IMG/VR virus record: IMGVR_UViG_3300044731_002337
Coordinates: 1-64,000 of that record
Direction: 5' to 3' (one strand)
Length of the DNA: 64,000 bases
Below, one piece after another: positions 23,963-51,868 of the stretch. The translations under genes were made by a program, and so were the position numbers. A model generated the notes under the pieces. The model did not search any database, was not told the origin of the DNA, and worked only from the letters and a program-made list of their open reading frames with translations. Every line of letters starts with the position of its first letter. The first letter of the stretch is position 1.

Positions 23963-23976
23963 CCGGAAAATCCAAA
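23963..23976 (-). promoter_or_regulatory. Putative promoter motif TTTGGATTTTCCG
   Basis: 39 nt upstream of ATG 23924; an inverted partner at 24018..24030 serves the divergent gene. Confidence 0.6.
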
Positions 23977-24017
23977 AAAAAAAAATGTTTTTCGACAGAA
24001 ATAAATAAACTTTTTTT

Positions 24018-24030
24018 TTTGATTTTCCGC
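24018..24030 (+). promoter_or_regulatory. Putative promoter motif TTTGATTTTCCGC
   Basis: 45 nt upstream of ATG 24075. Confidence 0.6.
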
Positions 24031-24074
24031 GGAATCGGTTTTCATAGCGGTAACAAGACAAGGTATCAGTCTTG

Positions 24075-25023
24075 ATGGCTTCTGAGGAAATGACTGGTTT
24101 GCTTTCTTTACCATGTGATGGAGTTCATCATAAGGAGGATGTGTTACGCAATGTGCCGTCTGACGTGTATTTGGACATGGATGACATTAAGGGGTATATG
24201 GAGGGTGAAACACGTGAGTGGCCGTGCAAGGAATGTCTCTGCGCCATGATTGAGCGATTACATCCGTAAGTAGAGATTATTGGTATGTGTATTCACTTGG
24301 CATGGTTAGGCGTGATGAGAAATATCGAAACATGTTTTTCTATGAGCGTTGGCTTTCTGGGATATTCCATCAGATCAAATTTTTGAATTTTAGTATGAAG
24401 CAAATGTATCAAAGCTTTGTGAACCGTGGAGACATTTACTTGACATACGATGTACGAAAAAAGCTTGCGAATGGAATAGGATCAAAACTCTGTGGTGACA
24501 AGCATGTACCCGAGAAGACGATGCTACTACAACGACTTGATATGCCGCCTGAAGACATTCGTGATGACAACAAGTGCAAGGAATGTCTCGAGTACTTTTT
24601 CAAGGAAAATCTCACGTAAGAATAGTTTTTTTTTTATTTCCTATTGATACCATGATTTATGGTAGATCATGGGCCTTGTTGCAACAGTATTGTGAGGAGG
24701 GTCGATTTGCGATGGCGGTCAAGTTGGTATCGTTTACACCAAGCAATCGATTGAAGCTGAACCAATTTCCAACGAGTGTACTCAATGTTCCACATGAAGC
24801 GATGGCGAATTCTGCTTTTCACCAGATTCGGTGGCTGATCCTTCATGGGAAACATCTTGGTATTCATGATTGTGAGTTTTGCAAGACTGAAGCCAGCATC
24901 AATTATGATCCGGACAATGAGGAGGATGAGGAGGAGGAAGAAGAAGAAGAAGAAAAAAGTTGCCTAGGAAAGAGAAAACATGAAGACGTGTTTCCATGCA
25001 TGGATGTTGTGAGTAATAAATAG
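24075..25023 (+). CDS. Spliced three-exon Cys/His (putative Zn-binding) module protein, join(24075..24265,24310..24615,24666..25023), 284 aa
   Basis: Introns of 44 nt (GTAAGT..TTAG) and 50 nt (GTAAGA..GTAG), both phase 2, restore one frame across three ORF-track fragments. Confidence 0.85.
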
Positions 25024-25047
25024 ATAATAAGAAAACGACTTGCTCTC

Positions 25048-26454
25048 ATGTCTTTTTTTGGTAAGCATTCTCCACTTAGGGTTACATGTTATGATAAACC
25101 AGTACAAATGGAGGATATGGTATCCAAAGAGGATAGTGTATTATTGCAACGTTTTTTTAGTCGATATGGGCAAGAAAGTTTTGAGGAGGAAAGGTTAAGT
25201 TTGGAGCGACTCGATTCGTATTTGGATATTCCATTAGTGCAAGTTGTGTTTACTCCATGTTATGAAGCATTACGCCGGGTAGTAGAGTTGGTGGATGGAG
25301 ATTTTATTCGTGTCATTGGATTAACGCATGGACAGGATAGTAAACAACAACAGCCGCCAGTTGAGGTGGAGGGACAAATGAAATGCTATGAGAAATTGTT
25401 TACAGAAGAGATATTGTTAGAGGCGATTGAAAAGGGAGATATGGATGTTGTGGATTTGGTGTGGAAATTAGGGTACGCGTATGATATCCAAGCATTTTAT
25501 TACACTGCTGTATCACATAAGCACGAAATGATAGCAGAGTATTTACTGGAACATGATGCACCTTTAGATCATGATGTGTTGCTGCATACGATACAAATGG
25601 GGTATCTCAAGTGTGTACAAACCATCTATTTACGAAACTCTAATTTATTTGATGACAAGTGTATGTTGACGGCAGTAACGTATAATCAGATAGCCATGAT
25701 GGATTTTGTGTATCAGATAGTTCCAGAAGTGGATATGGAATGTTTTTCGGTGGCTGTAAAAGAGGGCTTCGTAGAGGTATTGCGAAAATTATGTACCTGG
25801 AAAACTGTGAATGTATATGATATGAGAGACTTACAAAATGAGGCGATCATGTACGGGCATGTACCCATCATTGACTACTTATTGCAATTTGGGTCACATT
25901 TTATGTTACATTCATTAAACGTGGCCGCATGTCATAACGATCTAGATATGGTGCGGTTTATGTATTCTAAAGGAGTTCGACTATATCTTCATACCCATTT
26001 TTTGAGGGATCTCATGTCAAAGCCCAACTGTTTGGATGTATTGAGGGTTATTCATGAAGAGTATCATGAGCCATTAACAGAGGGAGTACTAGATGCGGCA
26101 ATACGATATTCCACGGTCGATGTTGTAAAGTTTGTACATGAAAGTGGTGTACCATTAACCTCATCATTATGGATGGAATTTCTTCAAACGTTTGACAGAG
26201 ATAATACTCATTTTTATGAATATTTGTTTGATAAGGCTTGTCCATGGCCAATTGAACTGTTTGTGGAGAAAGCATGTATCTGTGGTAGGTTATCATTGGT
26301 GAAATTTGCGATCAAACATCAGTGCCCTTATAGTCTGAACACGTGTATTGAACTGTGTAAGCGACATAAACGAAAAAAAGTGCTTGATTTTCTCTTGTCA
26401 TTATGTCCAAATTCAGGGAATATGCTTCGAAAGAGGCTATACCGAACCTGTTAA
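25048..26454 (+). CDS. Ankyrin-repeat protein with shared N-terminal YLDIP domain
   Basis: FGKHSPL..LERLDSYLDIPLV; ankyrin-like helical repeats, CPW; basic C-terminus. Confidence 0.85.
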   Translation: MSFFGKHSPLRVTCYDKPVQMEDMVSKEDSVLLQRFFSRYGQESFEEERLSLERLDSYLDIPLVQVVFTPCYEALRRVVELVDGDFIRVIGLTHGQDSKQQQPPVEVEGQMKCYEKLFTEEILLEAIEKGDMDVVDLVWKLGYAYDIQAFYYTAVSHKHEMIAEYLLEHDAPLDHDVLLHTIQMGYLKCVQTIYLRNSNLFDDKCMLTAVTYNQIAMMDFVYQIVPEVDMECFSVAVKEGFVEVLRKLCTWKTVNVYDMRDLQNEAIMYGHVPIIDYLLQFGSHFMLHSLNVAACHNDLDMVRFMYSKGVRLYLHTHFLRDLMSKPNCLDVLRVIHEEYHEPLTEGVLDAAIRYSTVDVVKFVHESGVPLTSSLWMEFLQTFDRDNTHFYEYLFDKACPWPIELFVEKACICGRLSLVKFAIKHQCPYSLNTCIELCKRHKRKKVLDFLLSLCPNSGNMLRKRLYRTC

Positions 26455-26597
26455 CCTTCTAAACTGCCAGGGGTAATGAGAAATGGTGCAATGCAGAACT
26501 TATTATTCCGTAATAAAATCTGGCGGTCATCATGGATGTCGACATTAGGAGAATCTTCCGATACATAACAACATGCGATGATCTTGAGTGAAAAACT

Positions 26598-27995: not shown

Positions 27996-28005
27996 ATTAG
28001 AAATG

Positions 28006-28019
28006 TTTGGATTTTCTGC
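28006..28019 (+). promoter_or_regulatory. Variant promoter motif TTTGGATTTTCTGC
   Basis: One mismatch to consensus, 37 nt upstream of in-frame ATG 28056. Confidence 0.45.
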
Positions 28020-28055
28020 GTGGATCTATTGGTAATTTTTTGTATTTTGTGGGCA

Positions 28056-28499
28056 ATGTTTTTTCTACTTTCTAATAAGGGATCTTCGTCAAAGCCAAGA
28101 GCAAACCAGGCCAATTTAATTCGTCATGTAAGGTGGAAAGGTTTTGATATGAACAAGACATTGGAGTTATTACCATTTGAAATGAATGGGGAAGTAAGAC
28201 ACAGTATTTTCAAGATTGTGGCATTGGAGAATTGCTCATCGTCACATGTGCATGCCAAGGACATAATACTAGAACGTTTGGGATTATCCATGACACCAGA
28301 ATTGATCATGGAATTTTTGGAAAACAATGCCCATCCATGTGAAGGATGTGTTGAGTACATGATCTTGATGTTACGAGATCCAGAGACATGTTATTCCATT
28401 TTTTTGGAACATGGACATGAAGAGGCGGCTTTACGAACATTACATATCCATCAATGTGATGTAAAGCCTTCCTCATTTGAAAGGATTTTTCAGTCATAA
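28056..28499 (+). CDS. Intronless member of the Cys/His module family
   Basis: CSSSHVHAKDIILERL..PCEGCVEYMILMLRDP aligns with exon modules of 24075 and 44196 genes. Confidence 0.7.
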   Translation: MFFLLSNKGSSSKPRANQANLIRHVRWKGFDMNKTLELLPFEMNGEVRHSIFKIVALENCSSSHVHAKDIILERLGLSMTPELIMEFLENNAHPCEGCVEYMILMLRDPETCYSIFLEHGHEEAALRTLHIHQCDVKPSSFERIFQS

Positions 28500-28506
28500 A
28501 ACATGT

Positions 28507-33286: not shown

Positions 33287-33315
33287 ATTACTTATCGGAA
33301 AAAACAAAGAGGTAA

Positions 33316-37872: not shown

Positions 37873-37937
37873 GTTTTTTTCTTTTCTTCTCTTCTAAACT
37901 GCCTGGGATCTTGTGGGTTTATGACTTTTATTTAATG

Positions 37938-39179: not shown

Positions 39180-39241
39180 TTTTATGTCATCAAAGTTTTA
39201 GAGTAGAGTGACAATGTATACTCATTAGAAAGTTTTTTTAT

Positions 39242-39637
39242 TTATTTTCTTGGTCGTAGTTTCATTCCATGACGCATCATGCTTCTTGTGAGCATTTTAC
39301 TTGGTGTATTCTTCTTCCTCCTTTGTTTTGCCTTGGGGAATAAAAGTTCAAGAATGAGTAATGGGGCCTTGAATTGAACTGCCAAATGGTGATGAATTGA
39401 CTTGTCCACCTCATCCATGAATACATCCGGACGTAGAGTGATGACACGCTGTAAGAGTCTCCACCAACGTTTTCCAATCAAGTAGTTGACCAAATTTAAA
39501 GAGCGTCCTTTTGTTGCAACCTTGTAGTGTTGAATGTCATCTTCACATCGAATGACTCGATCAATCATTTGGTAGTCCGTTTCTGGTTTCCTGTGGTAGT
39601 ATTGTCTCCATACACGCAAAAGTTCATTATTGGCCAT
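39242..39637 (-). CDS. Hypothetical protein with basic C-terminus
   Basis: ORF from MANNELL, ends MKLRPRK; promoter motif 40 nt upstream. Confidence 0.65.
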   Translation of the reverse strand: MANNELLRVWRQYYHRKPETDYQMIDRVIRCEDDIQHYKVATKGRSLNLVNYLIGKRWWRLLQRVITLRPDVFMDEVDKSIHHHLAVQFKAPLLILELLFPKAKQRRKKNTPSKMLTRSMMRHGMKLRPRK

Positions 39638-39676
39638 AATGGATGCAAATGGTGGACGAATCAACAAAAGATCTCA

Positions 39677-39690
39677 GCGGAAAATCCAAA
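39677..39690 (-). promoter_or_regulatory. Putative promoter motif TTTGGATTTTCCGC
   Basis: 40 nt upstream of ATG 39637. Confidence 0.6.
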
Positions 39691-39704
39691 AAAATTTTCA
39701 AAAG

Positions 39705-39777
39705 TACACAAGACGAGACTCGAACTCGTGACTTTTGGCTCATAAGACCAACACTCTACCAACTGAGCTACTTGTGT
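39705..39777 (-). tRNA. tRNA-Ile (anticodon UAU), intronless
   Basis: 73-nt cloverleaf: acceptor ACACAAG/CTTGTGT, TAGCTCAGTTGGTAGA, anticodon arm TTGGT-CTTATGA-GCCAA, GTTCGAGTC; T-runs downstream. Confidence 0.95.
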
Positions 39778-39782
39778 CTCTC

Positions 39783-40044
39783 TCACGTCCAATCATGATT
39801 ATGGATGATGGATTTGTCACATAGCTTATAGTCAATTAAAAACTGTTCGATGCGATTACCATGTGATCCTTGAAGTTGAATCACAGTTTGATTCATGTCG
39901 TTTTTAAGTAAAGCGCCACCCACATTTAACACTAGTTTTAAGCATTTCAAAATCTTCTTGTAATCCATATCGTCTGGTAAGTGTTACACATTTTTTTCCG
40001 TTACGTTGTTGAACACGAATATGAACTCGGGCGGTATGATTCAT
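39783..40044 (-). pseudogene. SUI1: eIF1/SUI1 split by a frameshift
   Basis: VHIRVQQRNGKKCVT in one frame, LPDDMDYKKILK..VIQLQG in another; about 4 conserved residues missing at the junction. Confidence 0.8.
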
Positions 40045-40114
40045 GTTCTTGGTTTATTGATTTTCTTTATTCTGGGGAAATTTACAATCGGAGTTAATTA
40101 ATTAATTTTTTTTT

Positions 40115-40127
40115 TTTGATTTTCCGC
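40115..40127 (+). promoter_or_regulatory. Putative promoter motif TTTGATTTTCCGC
   Basis: 38 nt upstream of ATG 40165. Confidence 0.6.
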
Positions 40128-40164
40128 TGGGGCTGGTTCTTCGTGTTGAAAAATAAGTTTTAGA

Positions 40165-40707
40165 ATGTATCCGAAAGAGCAAGGTGATAGGTTGAGGGAA
40201 TGGATGTGCCATTTTCAAATTCGACTGGATCATGTGGCAAGGCATCAAGAGGAAGAAGAGGAAATGGGTCGTCGCGCAAGAAGAAAATTTTGGGAATGGG
40301 TCAAGAAACGATTTCCTTCTTTTGGTACAGAATCAAGTGAACTTTCTGGGTTTTTAAGGAAGCGAAAGGCATTCATGATCTCTGTACAAGACATTTGTTT
40401 TGGATCCCAAGATGATAGCATGACATTAGTTGCTGCAAATGGAAATTGTACCTTCATGGAAAAAACAAGAACACGATTTGAATTATCTTGTCCAGAAGAA
40501 AAAGAAGAAGAAAAAGGGGACGAATGGTTTGTGTTGGATGAAGATATACATGTGAGTAAAGGCCAAGATGGATCTGAAGCTGCAAGAGCACAATATCGTC
40601 GTCGACATTTACCGCTATTTATTCGTAACCTATTTCGGTTCCATGAGTTACCCTATGAGAAGAAATTGGCTATGGACGCCTTGTACTTTTTGGAAGCATG
40701 TTTATAA
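40165..40707 (+). CDS. Hypothetical protein, paralogue of the 23399 gene
   Basis: Shared DICFG and LPLFIRNLFRFHEL..LAMDA..FL. Confidence 0.75.
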   Translation: MYPKEQGDRLREWMCHFQIRLDHVARHQEEEEEMGRRARRKFWEWVKKRFPSFGTESSELSGFLRKRKAFMISVQDICFGSQDDSMTLVAANGNCTFMEKTRTRFELSCPEEKEEEKGDEWFVLDEDIHVSKGQDGSEAARAQYRRRHLPLFIRNLFRFHELPYEKKLAMDALYFLEACL

Positions 40708-40768
40708 AAATGACTCATTACCATTTCATGTATTGTGTTTTCACTCCAAGGTTACTGGGTAAATCCAT

Positions 40769-41584
40769 GTGGAAAAAATCAAAATGTGGTTAACACTTGC
40801 TCATGTCTACGGTATTTTACTTATGCCAAATCAATGGATTAGTTTTGTAGTGGTACTACTGAATGCATGGATGATTAGGACCCCCTATTTGTGTTTTGTA
40901 AATTGTGTGTTGAATATGGTTGGTAACATGTCATGGTGCGGTGTAGTATTTTCAATGCTATGGTTATTGGATTCTCAAAATTTGGTCATTGGTGAGTTAC
41001 CTGGGAAATTTAGAAAAGAGGTCGAATACATTGTAAGTGTAAGTAAAGATTTGAAACCAGATAATTCAGAGATTTTTTGGACGAGTGTATTTGCAGATAA
41101 TGGTCAGACAACCAATATTCCTTACTCTCAAGGGCTATATGATTACATATCTGGTTTACGGTGGCAAATCATGGAGTTTTGGTGTAAGCGAATTAATGGG
41201 TTTGGTACGCTCATCAATCCATCCAATTCAGTAGAACAAGATTGGCATATTGATTATACATGGTCATACACAAGTCTATTTATACCCATTGAAAATTGTA
41301 CATCATCCAACATGACTCAGATTATGACAAGTTCAATTGTATGGGGATATTTCCATAATTCACGTAATATCAAAGAAAAAGAACAAGAGAATGTTATGGC
41401 CACCATCATTGTACCAAGGAAATGGTCATTGTTGTTATTGCCACCAAGTACATTTCACCGTGGCGTAAAGAACAACTCTGATATGGATCGAACATTGTTT
41501 TGGATATCCTATCAGAGTCGAACCGATCCAATCGAACATGAACATGCAGTGCAAGACTTTACCAAGAAATCAATAGACTTGTGA
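40769..41584 (+). CDS. Membrane-anchored 2OG-Fe(II) dioxygenase-like (PhyH-like) protein
   Basis: QDWHID (HxD), FHRGVKNNSDMDRT (distal His and Arg); hydrophobic N-terminus. Confidence 0.6.
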   Translation: MEKIKMWLTLAHVYGILLMPNQWISFVVVLLNAWMIRTPYLCFVNCVLNMVGNMSWCGVVFSMLWLLDSQNLVIGELPGKFRKEVEYIVSVSKDLKPDNSEIFWTSVFADNGQTTNIPYSQGLYDYISGLRWQIMEFWCKRINGFGTLINPSNSVEQDWHIDYTWSYTSLFIPIENCTSSNMTQIMTSSIVWGYFHNSRNIKEKEQENVMATIIVPRKWSLLLLPPSTFHRGVKNNSDMDRTLFWISYQSRTDPIEHEHAVQDFTKKSIDL

Positions 41585-41675
41585 CGCTAGTTCATTCAAA
41601 GAGGTAACGCTAGTTCATTCAAAGAGGTAACGCTAGTTCATTCAAAGAGGTAACGCTAGTTCATTCAAAGAGGTA
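41584..41675 (-). repeat. Tandem array, 23-bp unit (+ strand ACGCTAGTTCATTCAAAGAGGTA) x4, core family 1
   Basis: Exact 23-nt periodicity, intergenic between convergent genes. Confidence 0.97.
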
Positions 41676-41700
41676 GTAAAAAGGTCATGATGAAAATATT

Positions 41701-42501
41701 TTATTTTTCAATAGGAAAAAAAATAGGCATTACAATTTTTGCTTTCACTGAAGGACAAGAACGAGGTTGCGGGGTTGGTTTTCTTTGTTTCTTGAGTGGG
41801 GCTAGTGAAAAATCAGAAGAGGAGTTGTCTTGCCTTGATCTTTTTCTTGGTAAGGCATAGAATAGAGCAGTTTCACCATTCTTGTTTCGAAGGTTCACAT
41901 CGGCCCCATAGTTAACCAGAAACTTGATTCCAATTCCCGAGTTTTTCTCAGAAGCACACATGAGAAGAGAACAGCCATCATTCTTGTCCGAGACTGAATT
42001 GATATCGCACTTGGCCGTCTTGATCAACCAATCAAACATGTCCACATCCATTGAGTGAAAATTATGATTCATCACTTTGAAAAAAACAGCAAACAAGATG
42101 AAATAACCCAATTCGTTTTCTTGGGTCAGCACCTCAGGCTTCTTCACAATCAACTCCTTCAACTCATAGTATTGCCCTTGTGCAAGCAACTCAAATGGAT
42201 CGGTAACCTCAGTTTCATTCAAAGAGGTAACTTTTGATTCATTCGAAGAGGTAACTTCTGGTTCAATCGAAGAGGTAACTTCTGGTTCAATCGAAGAGGT
42301 AACTTTTGGTTCAATCGAAGAGGTAACTTCTGGTTTAATCGAAGAGGTAACTTTTGGTTCAATCGAAGAGGTAACTTTTGGTTCAATCGAAGAGGTAACT
42401 TTTGGTTCAATCGAAGAGGTAACTTCTGGTTCATTCGAAGAGGTAACTTTTGGTTCAATCGAAGAGGTAACTTCTGGTTCATTCGAAGAGGTGGTAGACA
42501 T
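41701..42501 (-). CDS. Ankyrin-repeat protein with N-terminal (VTSSI/NEP[E/K])x12 repeat tract
   Basis: GCSLLMCAS..LVNYGADVNLRNKNGETALFYA. Confidence 0.8.
   Translation of the reverse strand: MSTTSSNEPEVTSSIEPKVTSSNEPEVTSSIEPKVTSSIEPKVTSSIEPKVTSSIKPEVTSSIEPKVTSSIEPEVTSSIEPEVTSSNESKVTSLNETEVTDPFELLAQGQYYELKELIVKKPEVLTQENELGYFILFAVFFKVMNHNFHSMDVDMFDWLIKTAKCDINSVSDKNDGCSLLMCASEKNSGIGIKFLVNYGADVNLRNKNGETALFYALPRKRSRQDNSSSDFSLAPLKKQRKPTPQPRSCPSVKAKIVMPIFFPIEK
42202..42493 (-). repeat. Tandem array, 24-bp unit x12, core family 1, in frame
   Basis: 24-nt periodicity with variant units. Confidence 0.97.
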
Positions 42502-42541
42502 GGTTGCAAATGTGTATTTTTGAAAAACCTAGCCCGGCGTA

Positions 42542-42555
42542 GCGGAAAATCCAAA
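42542..42555 (-). promoter_or_regulatory. Putative promoter motif TTTGGATTTTCCGC
   Basis: 41 nt upstream of ATG 42501. Confidence 0.6.
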
Positions 42556-42591
42556 AAAAAAACAAATTTCCGAAACGAACCTATAAAATAA

Positions 42592-43221
42592 ATGGAATGG
42601 TTGTATTGGTTTTTATTTTTATCGTTGATTGTTATATTTATATTTGAGATACCCATGAAGACATGCTATGGATTACCAGGTTATAAGTTGAAGGACAATA
42701 TAATCAATAGGCCCATAAAGAGTTATTATGCAACACATCCATTACCATTAGATATTGTATTGGAGAATTATGAAGTATGGAAAGGGTTTGCGGACAAGTA
42801 TGCTATTCGATGGTGGTTTAGTGAAGGAACAGCTTTGGGTCTTTATAGAGGAAATGATTTTAATTTGAATGATGATGATGTGGATCTTTGTGTTGATGGT
42901 GATTGGTTACTATGGTTTGGTAGGTATGGATATCTTGAGTTAATAGATTTGGGGTTTCGACATGTTCATACGAATCCGTATTATATGTTGAGTTTTATTC
43001 GTAAAGGAGTAAAGTTGGATGTTGCATTCCAGGTACGTGGTCCAGGATTATTGTGTATTGCCAATTATGGGGAATGTGAGGGTACCTATCCATTAACTCG
43101 TCAACTCAAATGGGTTCAAGGGAAATATCCTGTTCCAGACCATGTTGAATATTATGAAAAACTCTATGGTCCTGAATGGATGATACCCAAGAGAAATAGC
43201 AAACCCATTCCAAATAAATAA
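42592..43221 (+). CDS. LicD-family nucleotidyltransferase-fold protein with N-terminal membrane anchor
   Basis: WWFSEGTALGLYRG..NDDDVDL signature. Confidence 0.8.
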   Translation: MEWLYWFLFLSLIVIFIFEIPMKTCYGLPGYKLKDNIINRPIKSYYATHPLPLDIVLENYEVWKGFADKYAIRWWFSEGTALGLYRGNDFNLNDDDVDLCVDGDWLLWFGRYGYLELIDLGFRHVHTNPYYMLSFIRKGVKLDVAFQVRGPGLLCIANYGECEGTYPLTRQLKWVQGKYPVPDHVEYYEKLYGPEWMIPKRNSKPIPNK

Positions 43222-43225
43222 GTTT

Positions 43226-44196
43226 TTATTCTAGTTGAATTGGATGATTCTTGTTGTGGTTGCAAAATCGACATGCATTATTCTTCATGGTAATAGGAAC
43301 ACGACGTCTCAACGCATTCAAGAGTTTGTGGAAGTCAGAGTTTTCTTCCTCCTTGTGTTTCACGTCTAGATCTGATTCCTTCAGAGTCACCTTACGAATC
43401 CGAAACAACCTTGATGCCCAGTTGAACCTTCCATGACAGACCAAAAATCGGAATTCCAGTGTTGGGCTAGATAACCATGAGTTGTACCAAAAAAAAACAC
43501 AAACTTACTCTAAAACGTTTTCCATAATGTGTTGAATGCAGTCGAGACACCTGAGTTGTGGGCTGATATGGGTTGGATACATTTCCAAAAGTTCAAACAT
43601 GTCCGACTTGGATTTAGAATGTTTGATTCCGCATGCATGGGTACAGACTCGTTCAAATAGAAAACGTCTTTCCTTTTGCGTCTTGTAGGCTGAACATGCC
43701 AAGTACTTGCGGTGCAATGTCTTGATGTTGAAATCGTTCCTGGCCGCGTATTGAAGTAATTCCCTCTTTTGTGGCTCTTGTGTGAACCATTCCTTGATCC
43801 CAGTATCACTAGCCAAAAATGAGAATGATTACATACAATGTAAAATTACGGGTCAAGAACTTTGATGAGGTACTTCATGCACACTTGGCATGGCGATTCC
43901 GTGTCTTCCAAATAGGCAGCAATCATGTCATTTTCTACGTAGACATTCATTTTGCGAATCAATTCAACCTTGGGGTGAGATTCGCCGTCACATGGAGCAG
44001 CAACAAGGCGTTCAAGAAATTCAACTTTTTCGTCATTGCGCAGGTCGTGCTCCAAACTTCGGTAGACTCGGTTCGCTTCCTTCACGTCCTCAACTGTTTC
44101 CAAAGGATTCTGTTGCAAGTCCGGTTCCAAAAGTTCTAATCCAGCAGCTATTTCCCTATGAAGTTCATTTGTTTTGGCAATCATTTGCGAGTCCAT
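43226..44196 (-). CDS. Spliced three-exon Cys/His module protein, complement(join(43226..43466,43509..43808,43850..44196)), 295 aa; paralogue of 24075
   Basis: Phase-2 introns of 41 nt (GTAATT..CTAG) and 42 nt (GTAAGT..CTAG) at positions equivalent to those in the 24075 gene. Confidence 0.85.
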
Positions 44197-44231
44197 GGTT
44201 TTGTAATGTGATGAAATGGTGAAAAGTCCCA

Positions 44232-44245
44232 GCGGAAAATCCAAA
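44232..44245 (-). promoter_or_regulatory. Putative promoter motif TTTGGATTTTCCGC
   Basis: 36 nt upstream of ATG 44196. Confidence 0.6.
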
Positions 44246-44527
44246 AAAAAAAGTTTATTCCGATTCCAAATGTTGTTATTTGTTCAGATCTCATGTGTCT
44301 CACATCACCATTTTTATTCCCCTATTATCGACATGAAGAACCTTTTTTATTCCAATTGAAAATACTTCTTGCCAAATAAAATACTTTTTCATCACAAGAA
44401 GAACATTTTTATTCCAACAGAAAACACTTTTTACCTCTTTTGCAAAATAAAAAACTTTTTCTGATAATTGAAAACTTTTTCGTCTCTTTTATCAACATGG
44501 AAAGCGTTTGATAATTAGGAGTTTGTA

Positions 44528-44702
44528 GTTCATTCGAAGAGGTAACTTCTTGTTCATTCGAAGAGGTAACTTCTTGTTCATTCGAAGAGGTAACTTCTTG
44601 TTCATTCGAAGAGGTAACTTCTGGTTCATTCGAAGAGGTAACTTCTGGTTCATTCGAAGAGGTAACTTCTGGTTCATTCGAAGAGGTAACTTCTTGTTCA
44701 TT
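44528..44702 (-). repeat. Tandem array, 24-bp unit GAAGTTACCTCTTCGAATGAAC(A/C)A x7, core family 1, probably non-coding
   Basis: 24-nt periodicity in a ~500-bp divergent intergenic region. Confidence 0.97.
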
Positions 44703-44739
44703 TGGAAAATAAATCAAGTCGACGAAAATAAAAATATAC

Positions 44740-45015
44740 ATGGGTAATAAAGAGCAAAAATCGTATGCCTTGGTTGAGGAGATAACGGAAGAGTTGGATC
44801 CTACCCATGTACAGTTTATGTGTAAGGAGATTGTTGGCTACAAGGTGGAAAATAGATATCATGTAGTAATAGAGTGGTCGGATGGAGATCATACAGCATA
44901 TGATATAGAGGTGCTGAATTCGATTTTTGATCAATTATCCAAAAAGACAAGAGAAGGATTTATGGCGTGGAATTTATTACAATTATCCATATTGTTTACT
45001 ATGGCGTATATTTAA
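44740..45015 (+). CDS. Hypothetical protein
   Basis: 91-aa ORF with A-rich ATG context. Confidence 0.6.
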   Translation: MGNKEQKSYALVEEITEELDPTHVQFMCKEIVGYKVENRYHVVIEWSDGDHTAYDIEVLNSIFDQLSKKTREGFMAWNLLQLSILFTMAYI

Positions 45016-45620: not shown

Positions 45621-45631
45621 ATGATATTGTT

Positions 45632-48600
45632 TTATTTTAGTTTAATCGTTTTTTGATCTTCTTCAAGTGCTGGAGCTATTTGATTTTCATAAGGTTGGCG
45701 ACCACTATTACCAGATACAAGTTCCCCATTAACTTCATGTGAAATAATGGATACATAATCGACTAGACGTACATTGAGACCATGTCCATATTTACTGTGA
45801 GCCCAATTGATGGCTTTAATAATGTCTGATATTGAGTTACCAAAAGCACCACCTCCCACAAGTGTTAACCATAAATCCTTGGCCTTGAGAGCATGTGCAG
45901 CCAAATAAGTAGATGCATACGCTGCTTGAAGAAGAAAGTAAGCCTTTTCATTACCATTTTCGTGGGTTTTATTATATTGTCCAGAAGTACCTTGGAACAT
46001 GTTTGCTGCGGCTACAAATACTTGATGAACTGGGAATGAAGTAGATAACAGTTGAATTTGTTCATTGTTTGGGGCCCCATAATAAACCATTGCATTTTCA
46101 TTGTATAAAACACGTACAAGACCAAGTAAATCTGTGTATTCGGTCGTATCTTCTGGTGGTAATAATTGGAGTTTCCCACCTGGTAATTTAGTACGTTTAT
46201 CTTCAAACTGTTGTTTATATTCTTCACCTCGTTGTGGAAATGTGTTGGGGTCAAGCTCTTTAGGTACGTTGTCAATGTCATTAATGTCATATTTTACATA
46301 TCCGTTATCTACATTGAAATAGTCAGATAGACCCTCGAGGTAGTTAAGGTCACCTAAAGCTTTATTATCTTCCGTCTGTGATTTTCTTTTGTTGTATTCG
46401 TTTTTAGGTAAGTTATGAAGGCGCCCAATAGCATCTACTGGTGCCATAATACTACAAAACGGACCTTGTGTTTTATCATTTGCATAATTCAATAAGAATT
46501 TGTTATAATCTGCTCGAATAAAATCAACAGGGCATTCAAGCCCATTAAATTGACTTGCGGCTTGAAATACATGTCCTTGATGTTTAGGATCAGTCATGAT
46601 TTCCCATATATTTCCTAAATTATCTCCGGAATGTATTCGAATCTGTAAAAGTGGCTGTGATGTATCTATGGATGATGATACTCTATATAGTAGATCCTGA
46701 ATTGATTCATAATGTGCCTGTCCACCTTGTAGTTGTGAACCATTTTCACAAATAAGGTAATTTCCTTTAAACTTACCAAATAACTCTTGTTCAGTATCAT
46801 AGCCCGAAATATGTTTAACCCAATCGACTCGTCTTATTGGATCTCCCGTGAACTTGTCTTTTGGTTTGTTATCCTCTACTTTGTGGGTAATGGGTCCTCC
46901 AGGTTGGGGACTAATTAAATGTTTATGATTTTCAGAACTCTGGGTAGCTTCAACCCTAGACGTCCGTGATTGGGTGCTTGGTTTAGTAGTTATACCATAA
47001 TTTCCTTGTTTTATGGATTCGATGTATAACCCAAATCGATTATCTCCGGTGCGTTTCTTTCGTAAATCAACACTCTCCTCATCTTTCGAATAGTCATACC
47101 TTTTAGATATTTCATATTCTTCTTGTGTCAATGGCGTTATAAGTAATTCTTTCCATTGAACTCCTAATTCGTATGAGGTTTGGCTTGTATCTCCCACAAA
47201 TAACTTATGGCGACTAAAATCTGAATGTCCTGTGTGTGACAGTTTACACACGTAATCATGTTTATAATAAATGTTAAAGTATATCGTGTTCAAATCTCTA
47301 GTCTTATATAGTTTAAATGTGTCTTTCCATAATGTAGCATGGGTATCGAGAAATGGTATAATACCTGGTTTTTCTTTATTCCCTATTAACTTGCTATAGT
47401 ATTGATTAACATCATTAAAACGTTCATTTCGAATCCAATACTTGCATGTGTCATAGTGTAACATGATGTAGTATGCCTTGTTGAATGAAACAAAATATTC
47501 GCCACGTACACCTGTAACCCATGGTGGGAAATCACATTTTTTATCTTTATGGGTTTTTTCACCCGATCTCAAATCAATGACTTGGTAGTAGAGTAACATC
47601 TCAATAAGTAAGTCTGGTGTCATGTAGTAACTATTTTTTGAGTTTTCGAACCTATATATGCATGCTTTAGTATATTTCCATTCCTTTTTCATGATGTTTT
47701 TTACAGCATTATCATAATTTTTTTCTATGTTTGTTGTATAACTTATTAAACCATCTTTTTGCATGATGTCAGTAGTAAAATGTTTGTCCCAGTCAAATTC
47801 TTCTTTTCCTTGCGGACTAGTATTGGAATGTGGAGGATTTTTCTTAGGTTTTATCTTGGTCATGGTTTGTGGTGCTGGTGTTTGACAATACAACAGAATA
47901 CGTCGATCACCAGTGACATATGGATCTGGTTTGTAATTGTTTACATCATTTCTTAACTTTGTGTTTTGGTGAATATCTTCTTCGGTTATTGGCGTGTCCA
48001 GTAATTGTCTCCATTTAACTCCTAATTGGTATGAAGTTTTCATAGGATGTGTACCTTCCACATAAAGCGTATGGTCTTTGAAAATTTCGTTACCGGTATG
48101 ACGTAGCTGAGCGATGAGTAAATGATTAGGATATATTTTCACATATATTTCTTTCAATGAGTGACTGTTTGTTTTTTGAATTGTATCTTCCCACAGTTTT
48201 GCATGGGTATCGACAAATGGTATATGACCTGGTTGTTTGTTGTTCCCTATTAACTGGTTATAATATCGATTAACATCATCAAAACGTTCATTCCGAATCC
48301 AATACTTGTTTTTGTCATAGTGCACCATTACATAAATTGCCAAGTTGCGATATTCGTACATGCCTTCTGGGATTTTTAATTGTTCGTCTGTATGGGTTTT
48401 TTCACCCGATCTCAAATCAATGACTTGGTAGTAGAGTAACATCTCAATAAGTAAGTCTGGTGTCATGAAGTAACTATTTTTTGATTTTTCGAACCTATAT
48501 ATGCATGCTGGATTATAATTCCATTCCTCCACCATGATTTTATCTACAGCATTATCATAATTTTTTTCTATGTTTGTTGTATAACTTATTAAACCCTTGT

Positions 48601-48802
48601 CTTCCATTATATCAGTAGTAAAATGTTTGGTCCAGTCGAATTCTTCTTTTCCTTGCGGACTAGTATTGGAATGTCCATGATGTATCTCAGATGTATCATT
48701 CACTTCCGTAATCGTCTTTGATTGTACATTGGATGTTATAAGTAGGGTACATAGGTAAAGGAGTATAAATACTAAGGCGATAGCAAATAATGTATTATCC
48801 AT
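45632..48802 (-). CDS. Membrane-anchored protein with duplicated ~280-aa domain and C-terminal macrodomain/PARG-like domain
   Basis: N-terminal TM; 843-bp internal duplication; FQAASQFNGLE..DKTQGP..LTLVGGGAFGN. Confidence 0.6.
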   Translation of the reverse strand: MDNTLFAIALVFILLYLCTLLITSNVQSKTITEVNDTSEIHHGHSNTSPQGKEEFDWTKHFTTDIMEDKGLISYTTNIEKNYDNAVDKIMVEEWNYNPACIYRFEKSKNSYFMTPDLLIEMLLYYQVIDLRSGEKTHTDEQLKIPEGMYEYRNLAIYVMVHYDKNKYWIRNERFDDVNRYYNQLIGNNKQPGHIPFVDTHAKLWEDTIQKTNSHSLKEIYVKIYPNHLLIAQLRHTGNEIFKDHTLYVEGTHPMKTSYQLGVKWRQLLDTPITEEDIHQNTKLRNDVNNYKPDPYVTGDRRILLYCQTPAPQTMTKIKPKKNPPHSNTSPQGKEEFDWDKHFTTDIMQKDGLISYTTNIEKNYDNAVKNIMKKEWKYTKACIYRFENSKNSYYMTPDLLIEMLLYYQVIDLRSGEKTHKDKKCDFPPWVTGVRGEYFVSFNKAYYIMLHYDTCKYWIRNERFNDVNQYYSKLIGNKEKPGIIPFLDTHATLWKDTFKLYKTRDLNTIYFNIYYKHDYVCKLSHTGHSDFSRHKLFVGDTSQTSYELGVQWKELLITPLTQEEYEISKRYDYSKDEESVDLRKKRTGDNRFGLYIESIKQGNYGITTKPSTQSRTSRVEATQSSENHKHLISPQPGGPITHKVEDNKPKDKFTGDPIRRVDWVKHISGYDTEQELFGKFKGNYLICENGSQLQGGQAHYESIQDLLYRVSSSIDTSQPLLQIRIHSGDNLGNIWEIMTDPKHQGHVFQAASQFNGLECPVDFIRADYNKFLLNYANDKTQGPFCSIMAPVDAIGRLHNLPKNEYNKRKSQTEDNKALGDLNYLEGLSDYFNVDNGYVKYDINDIDNVPKELDPNTFPQRGEEYKQQFEDKRTKLPGGKLQLLPPEDTTEYTDLLGLVRVLYNENAMVYYGAPNNEQIQLLSTSFPVHQVFVAAANMFQGTSGQYNKTHENGNEKAYFLLQAAYASTYLAAHALKAKDLWLTLVGGGAFGNSISDIIKAINWAHSKYGHGLNVRLVDYVSIISHEVNGELVSGNSGRQPYENQIAPALEEDQKTIKLK

Positions 48803-48853
48803 GGGTTTTTTTTTCTTGGTTTGAGGAAAATAAAGTAGATAAGGAAAAAGATA

Positions 48854-49786
48854 ATGATGGAGGATGAGATGTGTGCGGGCTTTACAAAGAAGGGAACGAG
48901 GTGCGCTAAGAAGAGACGTAAATATTCTTTATTTTGTGTATTGCATCGTCAAATGGGTGAATGGAGTTCCTTGAAAGACAATGTATGTACCTTGACTCAG
49001 TTTCTAAGGAATAATGAAAAGTTACAACCACATTATGAGGTTAAGGAAAGAATAGCGTATGGAATGTCAGGACACATATTCGAGGCAGTTCACAAGGCGA
49101 GTCAATTAGCGGTAGTCATGAAGGTTGTAATAGGTCAACCAAAGATAGACGAAGTAAGCATTGTAAAGAGGTTTCATCCAAAAAAAGACAATCATTTAGT
49201 TCACTTGATTGATTCATTTGTGGATTTAACTTACAGTGATGAGCATAACATTCAACAGAGTGCAACAATATTGGTGTTGGAAAAGCTTCACAAGACGATT
49301 ATACATTATACCTATACGCCTGAGATAAGGGGGCAATTGATTTGTATGATGCAGCAGTTACATGGACATGGTATTGTATCGAATGATGTGAAATTGGAGA
49401 ATATCATGATGGATGAGGTGCGAAGAAGGGTTGTGTTGATTGACTTGGCATCAGCTATAGATGTGAATCAATGGGAAGGGCATTATCAATCAAGAGTTGC
49501 AGGGAATATGATCTATAAGAGTTTGGGTCTAATGTGTAATAGTGATAAAAAACCAACATACGCAGATGATTTGGAATCACTGGCCTATGTGATGTGGGAA
49601 TTACAAGTAGGAGCTGTTCCATGGGAAAAGGAATCCTTAGTTGAAAAAATGATTGAAAAGAAGAAGAAACTACCTAAATGTCCTCCTTTATTACTTCAAC
49701 TCATTTCTTATTGCCGTTCACTCGGGTCAGAATTACCTGATTATGAGAAAGTTAAACATATTTTTTTGTTTTGCGAGAGGGAATGA
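48854..49786 (+). CDS. Casein kinase 1/VRK-like Ser/Thr kinase
   Basis: GMSGHIF, VVMK, NDVKLENIMM, LIDLA, DDLESLAYVM..PW. Confidence 0.88.
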   Translation: MMEDEMCAGFTKKGTRCAKKRRKYSLFCVLHRQMGEWSSLKDNVCTLTQFLRNNEKLQPHYEVKERIAYGMSGHIFEAVHKASQLAVVMKVVIGQPKIDEVSIVKRFHPKKDNHLVHLIDSFVDLTYSDEHNIQQSATILVLEKLHKTIIHYTYTPEIRGQLICMMQQLHGHGIVSNDVKLENIMMDEVRRRVVLIDLASAIDVNQWEGHYQSRVAGNMIYKSLGLMCNSDKKPTYADDLESLAYVMWELQVGAVPWEKESLVEKMIEKKKKLPKCPPLLLQLISYCRSLGSELPDYEKVKHIFLFCERE

Positions 49787-49811
49787 GCCGTAAAATAAAA
49801 AGCAAGCAGTT

Positions 49812-50051
49812 ATGGATTTGATATTTACGTGTCCACATTGTGAGGATTATATTATTGTAGGTGAGAAGGATGTGAATTGTGGTATTTTTCGTCATGGAGC
49901 AAATCCGGATGGAAGTCATATAAGTCCACATTTGTCTATGGAAGAATGTGAACGATTACGTGCAGTACCAAATCATCAAGGATGTGTAAAGCCTTTTCGT
50001 ATTGTGTCTACTAACCCTGGATATCGCATTGAAGTATGTGATTATGTGTAA
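49812..50051 (+). CDS. Small Cys/His protein of a type common in giant viruses
   Basis: CPHC..NCGIFRHG..PH..CE.L..GCVKPFRI. Confidence 0.75.
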   Translation: MDLIFTCPHCEDYIIVGEKDVNCGIFRHGANPDGSHISPHLSMEECERLRAVPNHQGCVKPFRIVSTNPGYRIEVCDYV

Positions 50052-50068
50052 GAAATAAAGGGAGAAAA

Positions 50069-51208
50069 ATGGAAAACGTAATTCATTGTGCTACAGGTAA
50101 AGTGGAGGTGTATAAAGATTATGTGTTGAAATATAGTAACGCAGCCTATGTAGATGATTTTTTAACTGAATGTATGGTCATGCTAAATTCCAATCATCAT
50201 CCACATTTGGGTGAGATTTTAGAATTGTCGCATAATGGGGATTCGTATACGATGAAAATGCCTCGATATGCAAAGGTATTATTTGAGTCGATGGAGTTAA
50301 CGTTCCAAGTGGTATGGGATGTAGTGTCAGCATTGGTATATATGCATGAAGAGTTGGATATGGTACATTTGGATATTCATGATGCGAATATTTGCATTAC
50401 TGAACAAGGGCGTGGTGTATTGATTGATTATGGTCATGCGAATAGTAGGGAGGTAAACGATATGGGGGGCATGTATGTCATATCATTCCGTCCACCAGAA
50501 ATGTATCCACCTTCTTTTGATCAAGGATATAGTACATCAGATATATGGGCATTAGGTATGATGTGGCTCGAATATATGGGAATTTATGTAGTCACTACCA
50601 TATTACCCATTTTGTATCAGCATCTCAAATCCAATTGCACCTCTTCTTGTTTCCGCAAAAAATCATGGGGCAAGTTGATCGACAAGGCGGTGAAAACGTC
50701 TCCAACTCGTGGCAAGGGTGATTTTGGATGGGTGATTTATGAATTGTACAAGGATAAAGAAGAAATGTATTTAGAGTTTTTGGATAGAGTGATTGATCAA
50801 CATTCAAGTGATGTGAGAGAAGTATATTACGAGGTCATCCGACATATGATTCGATATGATGTTGGCATACGATTCACATCAAGGCAATTATTTGAATGTT
50901 TACGGGCGTTTAAGAATACACATCAATTTGAGTGTCACGAACCTGTGTTATATGTAAAACCTGATGAACGAGATAGGATAGAATGTGACTTGACACCAGA
51001 GCAAATGTGTATCATGTCAGCAGTGAGACATGAGCGAGCAGATAAGCCGTTTATGAGTCATTTTATTCGATTAGGGTTATTAACGGCGGAGAATGGTCGA
51101 CAATACTTGGCAGCTTATATGGCGTTAAAAGGACGTAAATCAGAATTCATTAATAAGTCATGTGTCATTAACGTGATACTACATTGGTTTGCCAAAGGAT
51201 TGGAATAA
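50069..51208 (+). CDS. Ser/Thr protein kinase
   Basis: HLDIHDANI, LIDYG, FRPPE, SDIWALG. Confidence 0.88.
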   Translation: MENVIHCATGKVEVYKDYVLKYSNAAYVDDFLTECMVMLNSNHHPHLGEILELSHNGDSYTMKMPRYAKVLFESMELTFQVVWDVVSALVYMHEELDMVHLDIHDANICITEQGRGVLIDYGHANSREVNDMGGMYVISFRPPEMYPPSFDQGYSTSDIWALGMMWLEYMGIYVVTTILPILYQHLKSNCTSSCFRKKSWGKLIDKAVKTSPTRGKGDFGWVIYELYKDKEEMYLEFLDRVIDQHSSDVREVYYEVIRHMIRYDVGIRFTSRQLFECLRAFKNTHQFECHEPVLYVKPDERDRIECDLTPEQMCIMSAVRHERADKPFMSHFIRLGLLTAENGRQYLAAYMALKGRKSEFINKSCVINVILHWFAKGLE

Positions 51209-51254
51209 GATTTTTCTCCGACTGAACCATAATAAATCAGAGTGTTATTGACAA

Positions 51255-51814
51255 ATGGATGTGTGTAAGTTTTATGCGGTCAAGAGTGAATTGGAAAGTG
51301 TGGTGACGGATTGGGAAGCGATAAGGCGGATTCTTGTAAGGTCACCTTTAGCTGAAACGATTTGGAAGAAACAATTGTTTTTGGGGGCAATAAGGACGTG
51401 TTGTGATCATTCTGTCACTCAATATGAAGTCATGCCTTTATTGGCTACTCATATTACGGAAGAAGAGTTTGAATCCATTACTAGCACTTGTCCTTGGTGT
51501 TTCAAAATGGCAATTCAATGGCTATATGAGTAAGTTGTTGTGGAAAAAAAACATAGAAATGATTCTAATTTTTTTTTTTATGAAATAGACCTGAAAGAGT
51601 ATTGGAGAGTATGATTACAAAAGAACGTTATGACTTGGCATTGCTCATCTTGAAGCATACGACATTTCACTTGGATTGTCACTTTGTCATGACGCATTTT
51701 CAAAAACATCCTTATCCCAATAAGCAAGGGCTATTAGTATTGCATCAATGTATATTACGTTTCAAGATTCCAGAAGAAGAGGAAGAGGAAGAGGAGGAGG
51801 AGGAAGAAGAATGA
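51255..51814 (+). CDS. Spliced two-exon Cys/His module protein, join(51255..51529,51589..51814), 166 aa
   Basis: 59-nt phase-2 intron GTAAGT..CTAAT..ATAG; exon 2 PERVLESMITKERYDLAL matches exon 3 of the 24075 and 44196 genes. Confidence 0.8.
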
Positions 51815-51823
51815 TGAAATGGA

Positions 51824-51868
51824 TTGGATTTTCCGGATAAAGAAAAAATATTTTATTTGATTTTCCGG
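51824..51868 (+). promoter_or_regulatory. Two copies of the GATTTTCCGG motif (51824..51836, 51856..51868)
   Basis: Upstream of ATG 51947 (79 nt from the second copy). Confidence 0.5.

What the first reader, a model, noticed from the sequence alone, without database searches (positions are those of the whole stretch)
23963..51868. Candidate promoter element TTTG(G)ATTTTCCG(C/G) at fixed distance from ATG
There are nine intergenic copies. Seven lie 36-45 nt upstream of an ATG on the same strand (23924, 24075, 28056, 39637, 40165, 42501, 44196), including an inverted pair serving divergent genes. It marks small lineage-specific genes and three of four Cys/His-module genes, but not tail fibres, kinases or RFC, which suggests one temporal class. 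It differs from the Mimivirus AAAATTGA early promoter.
Basis: partly seen in the sequence, partly recalled or inferred. Interest (0 to 1): 0.6.

Follow-up and report, generated by a model that had tools for sequence, protein, structure and literature searches.

The report
Conserved giant-virus gene-class promoter box
A 20-base signal (a run of T, then GGATTTTCCG) sits about 40 bases in front of some fifteen mostly unknown genes of an uncultured lake giant virus and is kept in front of the same genes in a distant relative. It is therefore very probably the promoter of one co-regulated gene class: real, but an ordinary kind of feature for giant viruses.

Summary
The window is the first 64 kb of a 295-kb fragment of a giant virus (NCLDV) from lake water that encodes its own RNA polymerase.

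- **The box.** Its full form is T(5-10)-G(G)ATTTTCCG-(C/G). The core GATTTTCCG occurs 17 times against 2.6 expected. Sixteen copies lie in the 8% of the genome that is non-coding.
- **Position and direction.** All 16 scored sites point at a same-strand gene, with a median of 39.5 nt to the ATG. Thirteen of the 17 core copies cluster between 24 and 78 kb.
- **Downstream genes.** They are not detectable paralogues.
- **Conservation.** In a relative (PolB 64% identical) the box is kept upstream of three orthologues, while the flanking DNA and even the proteins (28-30% identity) have diverged.
- **Context.** The genome has two other upstream signals: TTCCGAT, before PolB, RNA polymerase, ribonucleotide reductase, DHFR-TS and kinases; and an A-run 0-30 nt before about 40% of genes, including the packaging ATPase and fibre-like proteins.

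The box therefore marks a third promoter class. It is probably immediate-early, by analogy with medusavirus and EhV-86. The timing and the transcription start sites could not be tested, because no RNA data exist. Novelty is modest: a new member of a known kind.

The parts
23963..23982 (-). Box copy TTTTTTTTTGGATTTTCCGG, 39 nt (from CCG) before the ATG at 23924; one arm of the divergent pair
24011..24030 (+). Box copy TTTTTTTTTTGATTTTCCGC, 45 nt before the ATG at 24075; other arm of the divergent pair
28000..28019 (+). Weak box variant (GGATTTTCTGC, no T-run), 37 nt before the ATG at 28056
   Evidence: PWM score 17.6, the lowest accepted
39677..39696 (-). Box copy directly downstream of tRNA-Ile(TAT), 40 nt before the ATG at 39637
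40108..40127 (+). Box copy, 38 nt before the ATG at 40165
42542..42561 (-). Box copy, 41 nt before the ATG at 42501. On the other strand its T-run reads as an A-run followed by TTCCGAA, before the divergent gene 42592-43221
44232..44251 (-). Box copy, 36 nt before the ATG at 44196
51817..51836 (+). First of two tandem box copies (no T-run; it abuts the stop of the upstream ORF), 111 nt before the ATG at 51947
51849..51868 (+). Second tandem copy, 79 nt before the ATG at 51947. An 8-codon upstream ORF starts 46 nt after it
23676..23924 (-). Box gene, 82 aa, Cys-rich, no family match
24075..24269 (+). Box gene, 64 aa, C-x(3-4)-H...PCxxC module
28056..28499 (+). Box gene, 147 aa, same Cys/His module
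39242..39637 (-). Box gene, 131 aa, basic C-terminus, no family match
40165..40707 (+). Box gene, 180 aa. Its C-terminal 45 aa resemble the ORF 23399-23629 and a gene of the relative (L141 11144-11623) that has an ATTTTCCG variant upstream
41701..42501 (-). Box gene, 266 aa, 8-residue serine-rich repeats plus ankyrin repeats
43846..44196 (-). Box gene, 116 aa, same Cys/His module
51947..52990 (+). Box gene, 347 aa, no family match, basic cluster
4607..4613 (+). Related second box TTCCGAT, 39 nt before the ATG at 4653
26556..26562 (+). TTCCGAT box, 35 nt before the ATG at 26598 (ankyrin protein)
62833..62839 (-). TTCCGAT box, 41 nt before the ATG at 62791

Best explanation
The element T(5-10)-G(G)ATTTTCCG-(C/G) is the core promoter, or an essential promoter-proximal recognition site, of one co-regulated gene class of an uncultured giant virus. 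The virus transcribes its genes with its own multisubunit RNA polymerase. A specificity factor, probably viral and not identified, would read the box and place the polymerase so that transcription starts some 10-30 nt downstream, giving short leaders. This accounts for the constant 30-47 nt distance to the start codon. The regulon has at least 15 genes: small lineage-specific proteins, three Cys/His-module proteins, an ankyrin protein, an SNF2/DEAD-like helicase and several proteins with basic clusters. Most lie in a 55-kb stretch (24-78 kb). The box is one of three upstream codes in this genome. TTCCGAT marks replication, nucleotide-metabolism and transcription genes. An A-run next to the ATG marks about 40% of genes, including the packaging ATPase and fibre-like proteins. 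The box shares the pentamer TTCCG with TTCCGAT at the same distance from the ATG, so the two may be read by the same or related factors. Shown here: enrichment, location, orientation, spacing, lack of paralogy, and conservation across relatives. Inferred: that it acts in transcription initiation, and that its class is immediate-early, which I put at about even odds.
For: 1. Enrichment: 17 copies of the core against 2.6 expected; 16 of 17 are non-coding in a genome that is 92% coding.
2. A discrete class: a position weight matrix gives 19 sites scoring 17.6 or more, all intergenic, with the next best at 13.5.
3. Direction: all 16 scored sites have a same-strand gene downstream, and all 9 sites in tandem gene arrangements are co-directional.
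4. Spacing: the median gap is 39.5 nt, tighter than random placement within the same intergenic regions (p 0.003).
5. Site of action: seven of the 16 scored sites lie in divergent intergenic regions, where no same-strand upstream gene needs a terminator.
6. Not inherited by duplication: the downstream proteins are not paralogues by BLASTP, and sequence outside the box is not conserved.
7. Conservation in a relative from another sample (PolB 64% identical): the exact 17-mer hit that contig twice among 26 hits in 2.9 million viral contigs.
8. Conservation at orthologues: the box lies 29-36 nt before the ATG of the orthologues or positional equivalents of g145098, g77006 and g78286, whose proteins are only 28-30% identical. 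The intergenic alignments match only at the box.
9. A further relative has an intergenic GGATTTTCCGC.
10. The virus encodes RPB1 and RPB2.
11. Other classes exist: TTCCGAT lies 20-60 nt upstream of PolB, RPB2, probably RPB1, both RNR subunits, DHFR-TS and kinases, and is conserved before PolB in three viruses. The A-run precedes the A32-like ATPase and the fibre-like genes.
12. Precedents: in medusavirus a long non-AT motif 40-70 bp upstream marks 95% of immediate-early genes, mostly of unknown function, and a poly-A motif lies 0-40 bp upstream (PMC8557863). In EhV-86 a novel promoter element marks genes of one 100-kb region, the only genes expressed in the first hour (PMC2322966).
Against: There are no transcript data. 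No public RNA run holds this virus, so the start sites, the timing and even expression of the small ORFs are unknown. My gene models are simple longest-ORF calls, so some start codons, and therefore some distances, may be wrong. Four copies lie 79-111 nt from the called ATG. Many intergenic regions are only 60-90 nt long, which by itself limits the possible distances. No candidate recognition factor (VLTF3, VETF large subunit, TBP) was found in this 55%-complete record. Three box genes share a short Cys/His module, so they are not fully independent.
Confidence: 0.8

Rival explanations
1. The box is transcribed and acts at the RNA level, as a shared 5' leader element controlling translation or stability. 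The real promoter would lie further upstream.
For: Its position is defined only relative to the ATG. Strand-specific conservation would be expected for an RNA element too.
Against: Several intergenic regions leave almost no room upstream of the box: it starts 0-4 nt after the upstream gene's stop at 28000, 76942 and 78220. No conserved or stable RNA structure is predicted; z-scores range from -1.5 to +1.1. No Rfam family matches. The distance to the ATG varies from 30 to 47 nt, which suits a promoter with a variable leader.
Confidence: 0.08
2. The box is a binding site for a dimeric transcription factor of the host, or a captured one, that acts as an activator site rather than the core promoter. 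The core GGATTTTCC / GGACTTTCC is pseudo-palindromic (GGA-N3-TCC). From memory, it resembles the NF-kB consensus GGGRNWYYCC without its first G.
For: The pseudo-palindromic core and the GGACTTTCC variant at 240906. Some box proteins carry basic, NLS-like clusters: 6 of 16 against 52 of 271 others, p 0.08. This weakly hints at a nuclear phase.
Against: The central T's and the flanking CG are invariant, whereas the first G is replaced by T in 3 of 17 copies. That is not the conservation pattern of a kB site. The strict orientation and spacing to the ATG fit a core promoter. The virus has its own polymerase. No Rel-homology domain is found in the record. The host is unknown. The resemblance is recalled from memory, not tested.
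Confidence: 0.06
3. The T-run plus box is a 3'-end or termination signal for the upstream gene, like the poxvirus early terminator T5NT or the hairpins of mimivirus.
For: A run of T precedes most copies. Nine sites follow a same-strand gene or tRNA.
Against: Seven of the 16 scored sites lie in divergent intergenic regions with no same-strand upstream gene. No copy lies in a convergent region. No hairpin is predicted. In tandem regions T-runs are rare apart from these boxes, with 21 T-runs against 87 A-runs.
Confidence: 0.03
4. The copies are relics of a duplicated or mobile intergenic cassette and have no present function.
For: Regional clustering at 24-78 kb. There are two tandem pairs, 51824/51856 and 75307/75372.
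Against: Similarity ends at the borders of the 20-nt box. The box is retained at three orthologous positions in a relative whose flanking DNA is unalignable and whose proteins are 28-30% identical. This indicates purifying selection.
Confidence: 0.03

Closest known systems
Medusavirus immediate-early palindromic promoter-like motif with a poly-A motif (PMC8557863)
   Same: [quoted passage not shown] It coexists with a poly-A motif 0-40 bp upstream of many other genes. It is intergenic and found in divergent, not convergent, regions.
   Different: The sequence is unrelated (GCCATRTGAVKTCATRTGGYSRSG). The medusavirus motif is a true 24-nt palindrome at 40-70 bp. Medusavirus lacks most transcription genes, whereas this virus has RPB1 and RPB2. 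Timing is measured there and only inferred here.
EhV-86 (coccolithovirus) novel promoter element of the 100-kbp region (PMC2322966)
   Same: A lineage-specific element tied to genes of unknown function that cluster in one genomic region. Those genes are the only ones expressed in the first hour. The virus has its own polymerase subunits (PMC5294985).
   Different: That element marks many more genes, and I could not compare its sequence here. The clustering in this virus is looser: 13 of 17 copies lie within 55 kb, with outliers at 146 and 240 kb.
Mimivirus early promoter AAAATTGA and the proposed ancestral 'MEGA-box' TATATAAAATTGA (PMC5294985)
   Same: An octamer-scale, strand-specific, class-specific motif within 150 nt upstream of the ATG in a virus with its own polymerase.
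   Different: The sequence is unrelated. AAAATTGA is essentially absent upstream of genes here. The mimivirus motif marks about 45% of genes, including replication genes, which here carry TTCCGAT. The 2017 review lists no motif containing TTCC.
Poxvirus late promoter: T-rich core, 5-7 bp spacer, TAAAT initiator (PMC5294985)
   Same: A T-rich tract forms the upstream part of the element.
   Different: There is no TAAAT at or near the start of any box gene. The specific part here is GGATTTTCCG, directly after the T-run.
NF-kB / Rel binding site GGGRNWYYCC (recalled from memory, not tested)
   Same: GGATTTTCC and GGACTTTCC fit nine of the ten consensus positions and are pseudo-palindromic.
   Different: The first G is missing, the conservation pattern differs, position and orientation are fixed relative to the ATG, and no Rel-homology protein was found.

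Membership tests
Class-specific promoter motif of a nucleocytoplasmic large DNA virus | Over-represented and preferentially intergenic | tested here: met
   17 copies observed against 2.6 expected. 16 of 17 are non-coding where 8.1% is expected, p 5e-17. All 19 high-scoring PWM sites are intergenic.
Class-specific promoter motif of a nucleocytoplasmic large DNA virus | Strand-specific, upstream of genes, at a preferred distance from the start codon | tested here: met
   16 of 16 sites point at a same-strand gene. 9 of 9 tandem cases are co-directional. 13 of the 16 gaps are 30-46 nt. Permutation p 0.003.
Class-specific promoter motif of a nucleocytoplasmic large DNA virus | Conserved in related viruses upstream of orthologous genes while the flanks diverge | tested here: met
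   Met for three orthologue pairs in the relative from sample 3300048686. The 17-mer hits that contig twice among only 26 hits in IMG/VR.
Class-specific promoter motif of a nucleocytoplasmic large DNA virus | Virus-encoded transcription machinery | tested here: met
   RPB1 and RPB2 are present. VLTF3, VETF large subunit and TBP were not found, but the record is only about 55% complete.
Class-specific promoter motif of a nucleocytoplasmic large DNA virus | Association with one temporal expression class, and start sites just downstream | not testable with these tools
   No RNA run holds the virus. The DNA contigs laid on 39000-45000 gave no information on this.
Class-specific promoter motif of a nucleocytoplasmic large DNA virus | Required for transcription (mutagenesis or reporter assay) | not testable with these tools
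   This needs an isolate or an in-vitro system.
Mimivirus-type AAAATTGA early promoter | AAAATTGA enriched within 150 nt upstream of start codons | tested here: not met
   One occurrence in 287 upstream regions. It is not among the enriched k-mers.
Poxvirus-type late promoter | TAAAT(G) initiator 5-7 bp after the T-rich core | tested here: not met
   No TAAAT follows any box copy or lies at any box-gene start.
Hairpin or intrinsic terminator | Stable stem-loop downstream of a same-strand gene | tested here: not met
   Eight sites fold no better than shuffles, with z-scores from -1.5 to +1.1. Seven of the 16 scored sites lie in divergent regions.
NF-kB / Rel site | GGGRNWYYCC bound by a Rel-homology dimer | tested here: inconclusive
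   Nine of ten positions fit, but the first G is absent and the central positions are invariant. No Rel-homology domain is in the record. The host is unknown.
Known RNA family | Match to an Rfam covariance model | tested here: not met
   Only tRNA-Ile matched in the window.

The most novel reading that the evidence does not exclude
The long box and the short TTCCGAT box are two grades of a single recognition system that reads TTCCG. The T-tract and the pseudo-palindromic GGA-N3-TCC core would recruit an extra, dimeric factor, viral or hijacked from the host. This would switch a regionally clustered set of small, partly NLS-bearing proteins on first, giving an immediate-early host-takeover regulon in a deep, uncultured giant-virus clade. 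The promoter code of that clade would owe nothing to the AAAATTGA / 'MEGA-box' lineage proposed as ancestral for these viruses.
Probability: 0.12. Interest if true: 0.7.

Novelty: new member of a known kind. Interest (0 to 1): 0.45.

Why it matters
Class-specific promoter motifs are the main handle on the infection programme of giant viruses, and for uncultured lineages they are the only handle. This box defines a conserved regulon of about 15 genes, nearly all without known function, in a clade that has very few relatives in public data: the PolB search returned only four relatives, at 43-60% identity. Together with the TTCCGAT and A-run classes it sorts about half of the genes into putative expression classes from sequence alone. 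It also gives precise predictions for lake metatranscriptomes. The code is not AT-only and is unrelated to AAAATTGA, which bears on the proposal that the promoters of these viruses descend from one ancestral motif. It does not open a new kind of mechanism.

Tried and rejected
The 17-mer scan was the informative one.
Screening all fetched loci against the virus's proteins found only L205 (2.9 kb, DHFR-TS-like, with a tandem ATTTTCCG pair) as a possible further relative.
- **Whole-record search of the relative**: the record is not held.
- **The search for related loci with the box helicase and the neighbouring 845-aa protein**: no close relatives.
- **Contigs around tubulin homologues**: too short to reach the box region. 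L290 does carry an intergenic GGATTTTCCGC, and L291 a TTCCGAT 40 nt before an ATG.
- **RNA evidence:** none exists.
- **Laying DNA contigs of four lake runs on 39000-45000** (6,001 letters, one over the advised 6,000): fragmentary, near-identical contigs with no variation at or near the boxes, so no population-level footprint.
- **Function of box genes:** Pfam found only ankyrin repeats and a helicase. The ESM Atlas search of a Cys/His-module protein gave nothing.
- **Basic (NLS-like) clusters:** only weakly enriched, p 0.08.
- **Rejected readings:** a shared terminator after box genes, because nothing is common downstream of their stops; an RNA hairpin; and the idea that the T-run is merely the A-run of a divergent neighbour, because the run is present at tandem sites too.
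- **Virus placement:** not placed below phylum. The major capsid protein was not found in this fragment.

Full report
**What the window is**

The window is bases 1-64000 of a single 294,773-bp IMG/VR virus record, estimated 55% complete. The record encodes:
- a family-B DNA polymerase;
- RPB1 and RPB2 of a multisubunit RNA polymerase, and a ribonucleotide reductase large subunit;
- the RNR small subunit, DHFR-TS and kinases;
- an A32-like packaging ATPase;
- ankyrin and RING proteins and fibre-like proteins with an endosialidase-chaperone domain;
- one tRNA-Ile.

It is a nucleocytoplasmic large DNA virus from lake water. Public data hold very few relatives: the PolB search returned four, at 43-60% identity, and the best IMG/VR contig is 64% identical. 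My gene models are simple: the longest ATG-ORFs of 50 aa or more, with overlaps resolved greedily. This gives 287 genes and 92% coding sequence.

**Checking the observation**

Window shuffles expect fewer than one match, against 8-12 found.

In the whole record the core GATTTTCCG occurs 17 times against 2.6 expected. Sixteen copies lie in the 8.1% of the genome that is non-coding, p 5e-17, a 180-fold higher density than in coding sequence. The one coding copy (217631) has no T-run.

A weight matrix built from the copies separates 19 sites (score 17.6 or more, all intergenic) from the rest of the genome (13.5 or less). It also picks up a variant, TTTTTTTTGGACTTTCCGC, at 240906. Thirteen of the 17 core copies lie between 24 and 78 kb.

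**What it is**

Every one of the 16 scored sites has a same-strand gene downstream. All nine sites that sit between tandem genes are co-directional with those genes. The other seven lie in divergent regions, where no same-strand upstream gene could need a terminator. The median distance to the ATG is 39.5 nt, tighter than random placement within the same intergenic regions (p 0.003).

The downstream proteins are not paralogues of one another by BLASTP. The sites do not fold better than shuffled sequence, and no Rfam family other than the tRNA matches the window.

**Comparative evidence**

This is the strongest evidence. An exact 17-mer scan of 2.9 million viral contigs gave 26 hits. Two of them fall in IMGVR_UViG_3300048686_001337, the contig that carries the closest PolB in that collection. 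A second contig from the same sample (L287) is syntenic with 75-85 kb of this genome.

In these relatives' sequences the box lies 29-36 nt before the first ATG of three genes:
- the orthologue of g145098 (28% protein identity);
- the orthologue of g77006 (30% protein identity);
- the positional and sequence equivalent of g78286.

Alignments of these orthologous intergenic regions match only at the box. For g77006 they also match at a TTCCGAT just upstream. A further relative has an intergenic GGATTTTCCGC. Retention of a 15-20-nt block while the neighbouring DNA is unalignable indicates purifying selection on a cis-acting signal that belongs to the downstream gene.

**Context: two further upstream signals**

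K-mer enrichment in the 100 nt upstream of all genes shows three signals.

- **A-runs.** Seven or more A lie 0-30 nt before the ATG of about 116 genes. These include the A32-like ATPase and both fibre-like proteins. In tandem intergenic regions A-runs outnumber T-runs 87 to 21, so the T-run of the box is a specific feature, not the mirror image of a neighbour's A-run.
- **TTCCGAT.** This sharp 7-mer has no conserved flanks.
  - *Location.* It is not over-represented in total count, but 34 of its 50 copies are non-coding (p 1e-25) and 22 lie 20-60 nt before an ATG.
  - *Genes.* They include PolB, RPB2, a 55-aa ORF that looks like the detached first exon of RPB1, the RNR small subunit, DHFR-TS, an RNase H-like protein and two kinases. 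The RNR large subunit carries TTCCGAG.
  - *Conservation.* TTCCGAT is conserved before PolB in three viruses of the clade, and a fourth relative has it 40 nt before an ATG.
It shares the pentamer TTCCG with TTCCGAT and lies at the same distance from the ATG. Twice the two occur together (73646/73705, and 78230, where the sequence reads ...GGATTTTCCGCATTTTCCGAT).

AAAATTGA plays no role here.

**How it most likely works**

- **Shown:** the box is a strand-specific, position-specific, selectively maintained upstream signal of a defined set of at least 15 genes, in a virus with its own polymerase.
- **Inferred:** it is the core promoter of that class, read by an unidentified specificity factor, with initiation shortly downstream.
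- **Inferred:** because replication genes use TTCCGAT and morphogenesis genes use the A-run, the box marks a third expression class.

In medusavirus a long non-AT motif marks 95% of the immediate-early genes, 83% of which have unknown function, and a poly-A motif lies next to the ATG of many genes (PMC8557863). In EhV-86 a regional promoter element marks the only first-hour genes (PMC2322966). By these precedents I favour immediate-early timing, at about even odds. A weak excess of basic, NLS-like clusters in box proteins (6 of 16 against 52 of 271, p 0.08) fits the medusavirus picture but is not significant.

**Rivals**

I considered four alternatives: a transcribed leader element, an activator site for a dimeric factor (the core is pseudo-palindromic and, from memory, kB-like), a terminator, and a functionless relic. 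Each fits less well, as set out in the rivals section. Only transcript mapping can exclude the first two.

**Comparison and novelty**

No motif containing TTCC appears in the 2017 review of promoter motifs of these viruses. Literature searches for the box and for TTCCGAT returned only primers and unrelated work. In kind, the box is an ordinary class-specific giant-virus promoter. In sequence and lineage it is new. I rate it a new member of a known kind, with interest 0.45.

**Limits**

- There are no RNA data, and the genome is incomplete.
- The gene calls are crude.
- Only about 34 kb of the main relative could be read, plus a few short contigs of others.
- The virus is not placed below phylum.

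Noticed in passing
genome-wide; in the window at 4607-4613(+), 26556-26562(+), 33294-33300(-), 62833-62839(-): A second upstream box, TTCCGAT, lies 20-60 nt before about 30 genes, including PolB, RPB2, probably RPB1, the RNR small subunit, DHFR-TS and kinases (the RNR large subunit has TTCCGAG). 34 of its 50 copies are non-coding. It is conserved before PolB in three related viruses. It is probably the promoter of the replication/early class.
   Followed up: yes
genome-wide; for example window 1320-1331, 7260-7270, 45630-48815: A run of 7 or more A lies 0-30 nt before the ATG of about 40% of genes, including the A32-like ATPase (278247-279257) and the fibre-like proteins. It may be the late or general promoter, or a leader.
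   Followed up: partly
window 8746-8818, 26455-26471, 37873-37937; also about 84.9, 112.5, 128.3, 170.3 and 224.2 kb of the record: A repeated element of up to about 128 nt (CCTTTTAGGTTGTACCG ... CCTGGCAGTTTAGAAGG) has about 10 full or partial copies, lying just after gene ends and in convergent intergenic regions. It could be a 3'-end signal or a small mobile repeat.
   Followed up: partly
window 41585-41700: A 23-nt unit (CGCTAGTTCATTCAAAGAGGTAA) is repeated about four times in tandem in a convergent intergenic region. A similar tandem array lies in another convergent region outside the window.
   Followed up: no
window 10034-16027(-) and 16046-22060(-): Two adjacent genes of about 2,000 aa each have weak DUF3638/DUF3645 matches, probably a tandem duplicate of a giant P-loop protein.
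   Followed up: no
window 41701-42501(-) and 44409-44741(-): Both proteins carry many copies of an 8-residue repeat (E-P-K/E-V-T-S-S-I/N). The first continues into ankyrin repeats. Contigs from other lakes differ in repeat number around 44545-44593.
   Followed up: no
window 39704-39777(-): tRNA-Ile with anticodon TAT, immediately upstream of a box copy on the same strand.
   Followed up: partly
record 162029-166858(-) and 166942-167109(-): RPB1 appears split. The zinc-binding N-terminal motif is readable upstream of the called Met, and a 55-aa ORF with a TTCCGAT box lies just before it. This suggests an intron, a frameshift or an assembly error. PolB of the relative (L006 1980-4376 and 4397-4918) is split in a similar way.
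   Followed up: no
record 83720-84892(+): The virus encodes an alpha-tubulin homologue, about 40% identical to eukaryotic alpha-tubulins and 50-59% identical to a few metagenomic relatives. Related contigs also carry kinesin, ATG8 and heliorhodopsin genes.
   Followed up: partly
record 146780-150124(-): The ribonucleotide reductase large subunit is 1,114 aa long and has a weak Hint-domain match at residues 307-354, which suggests an intein.
   Followed up: no
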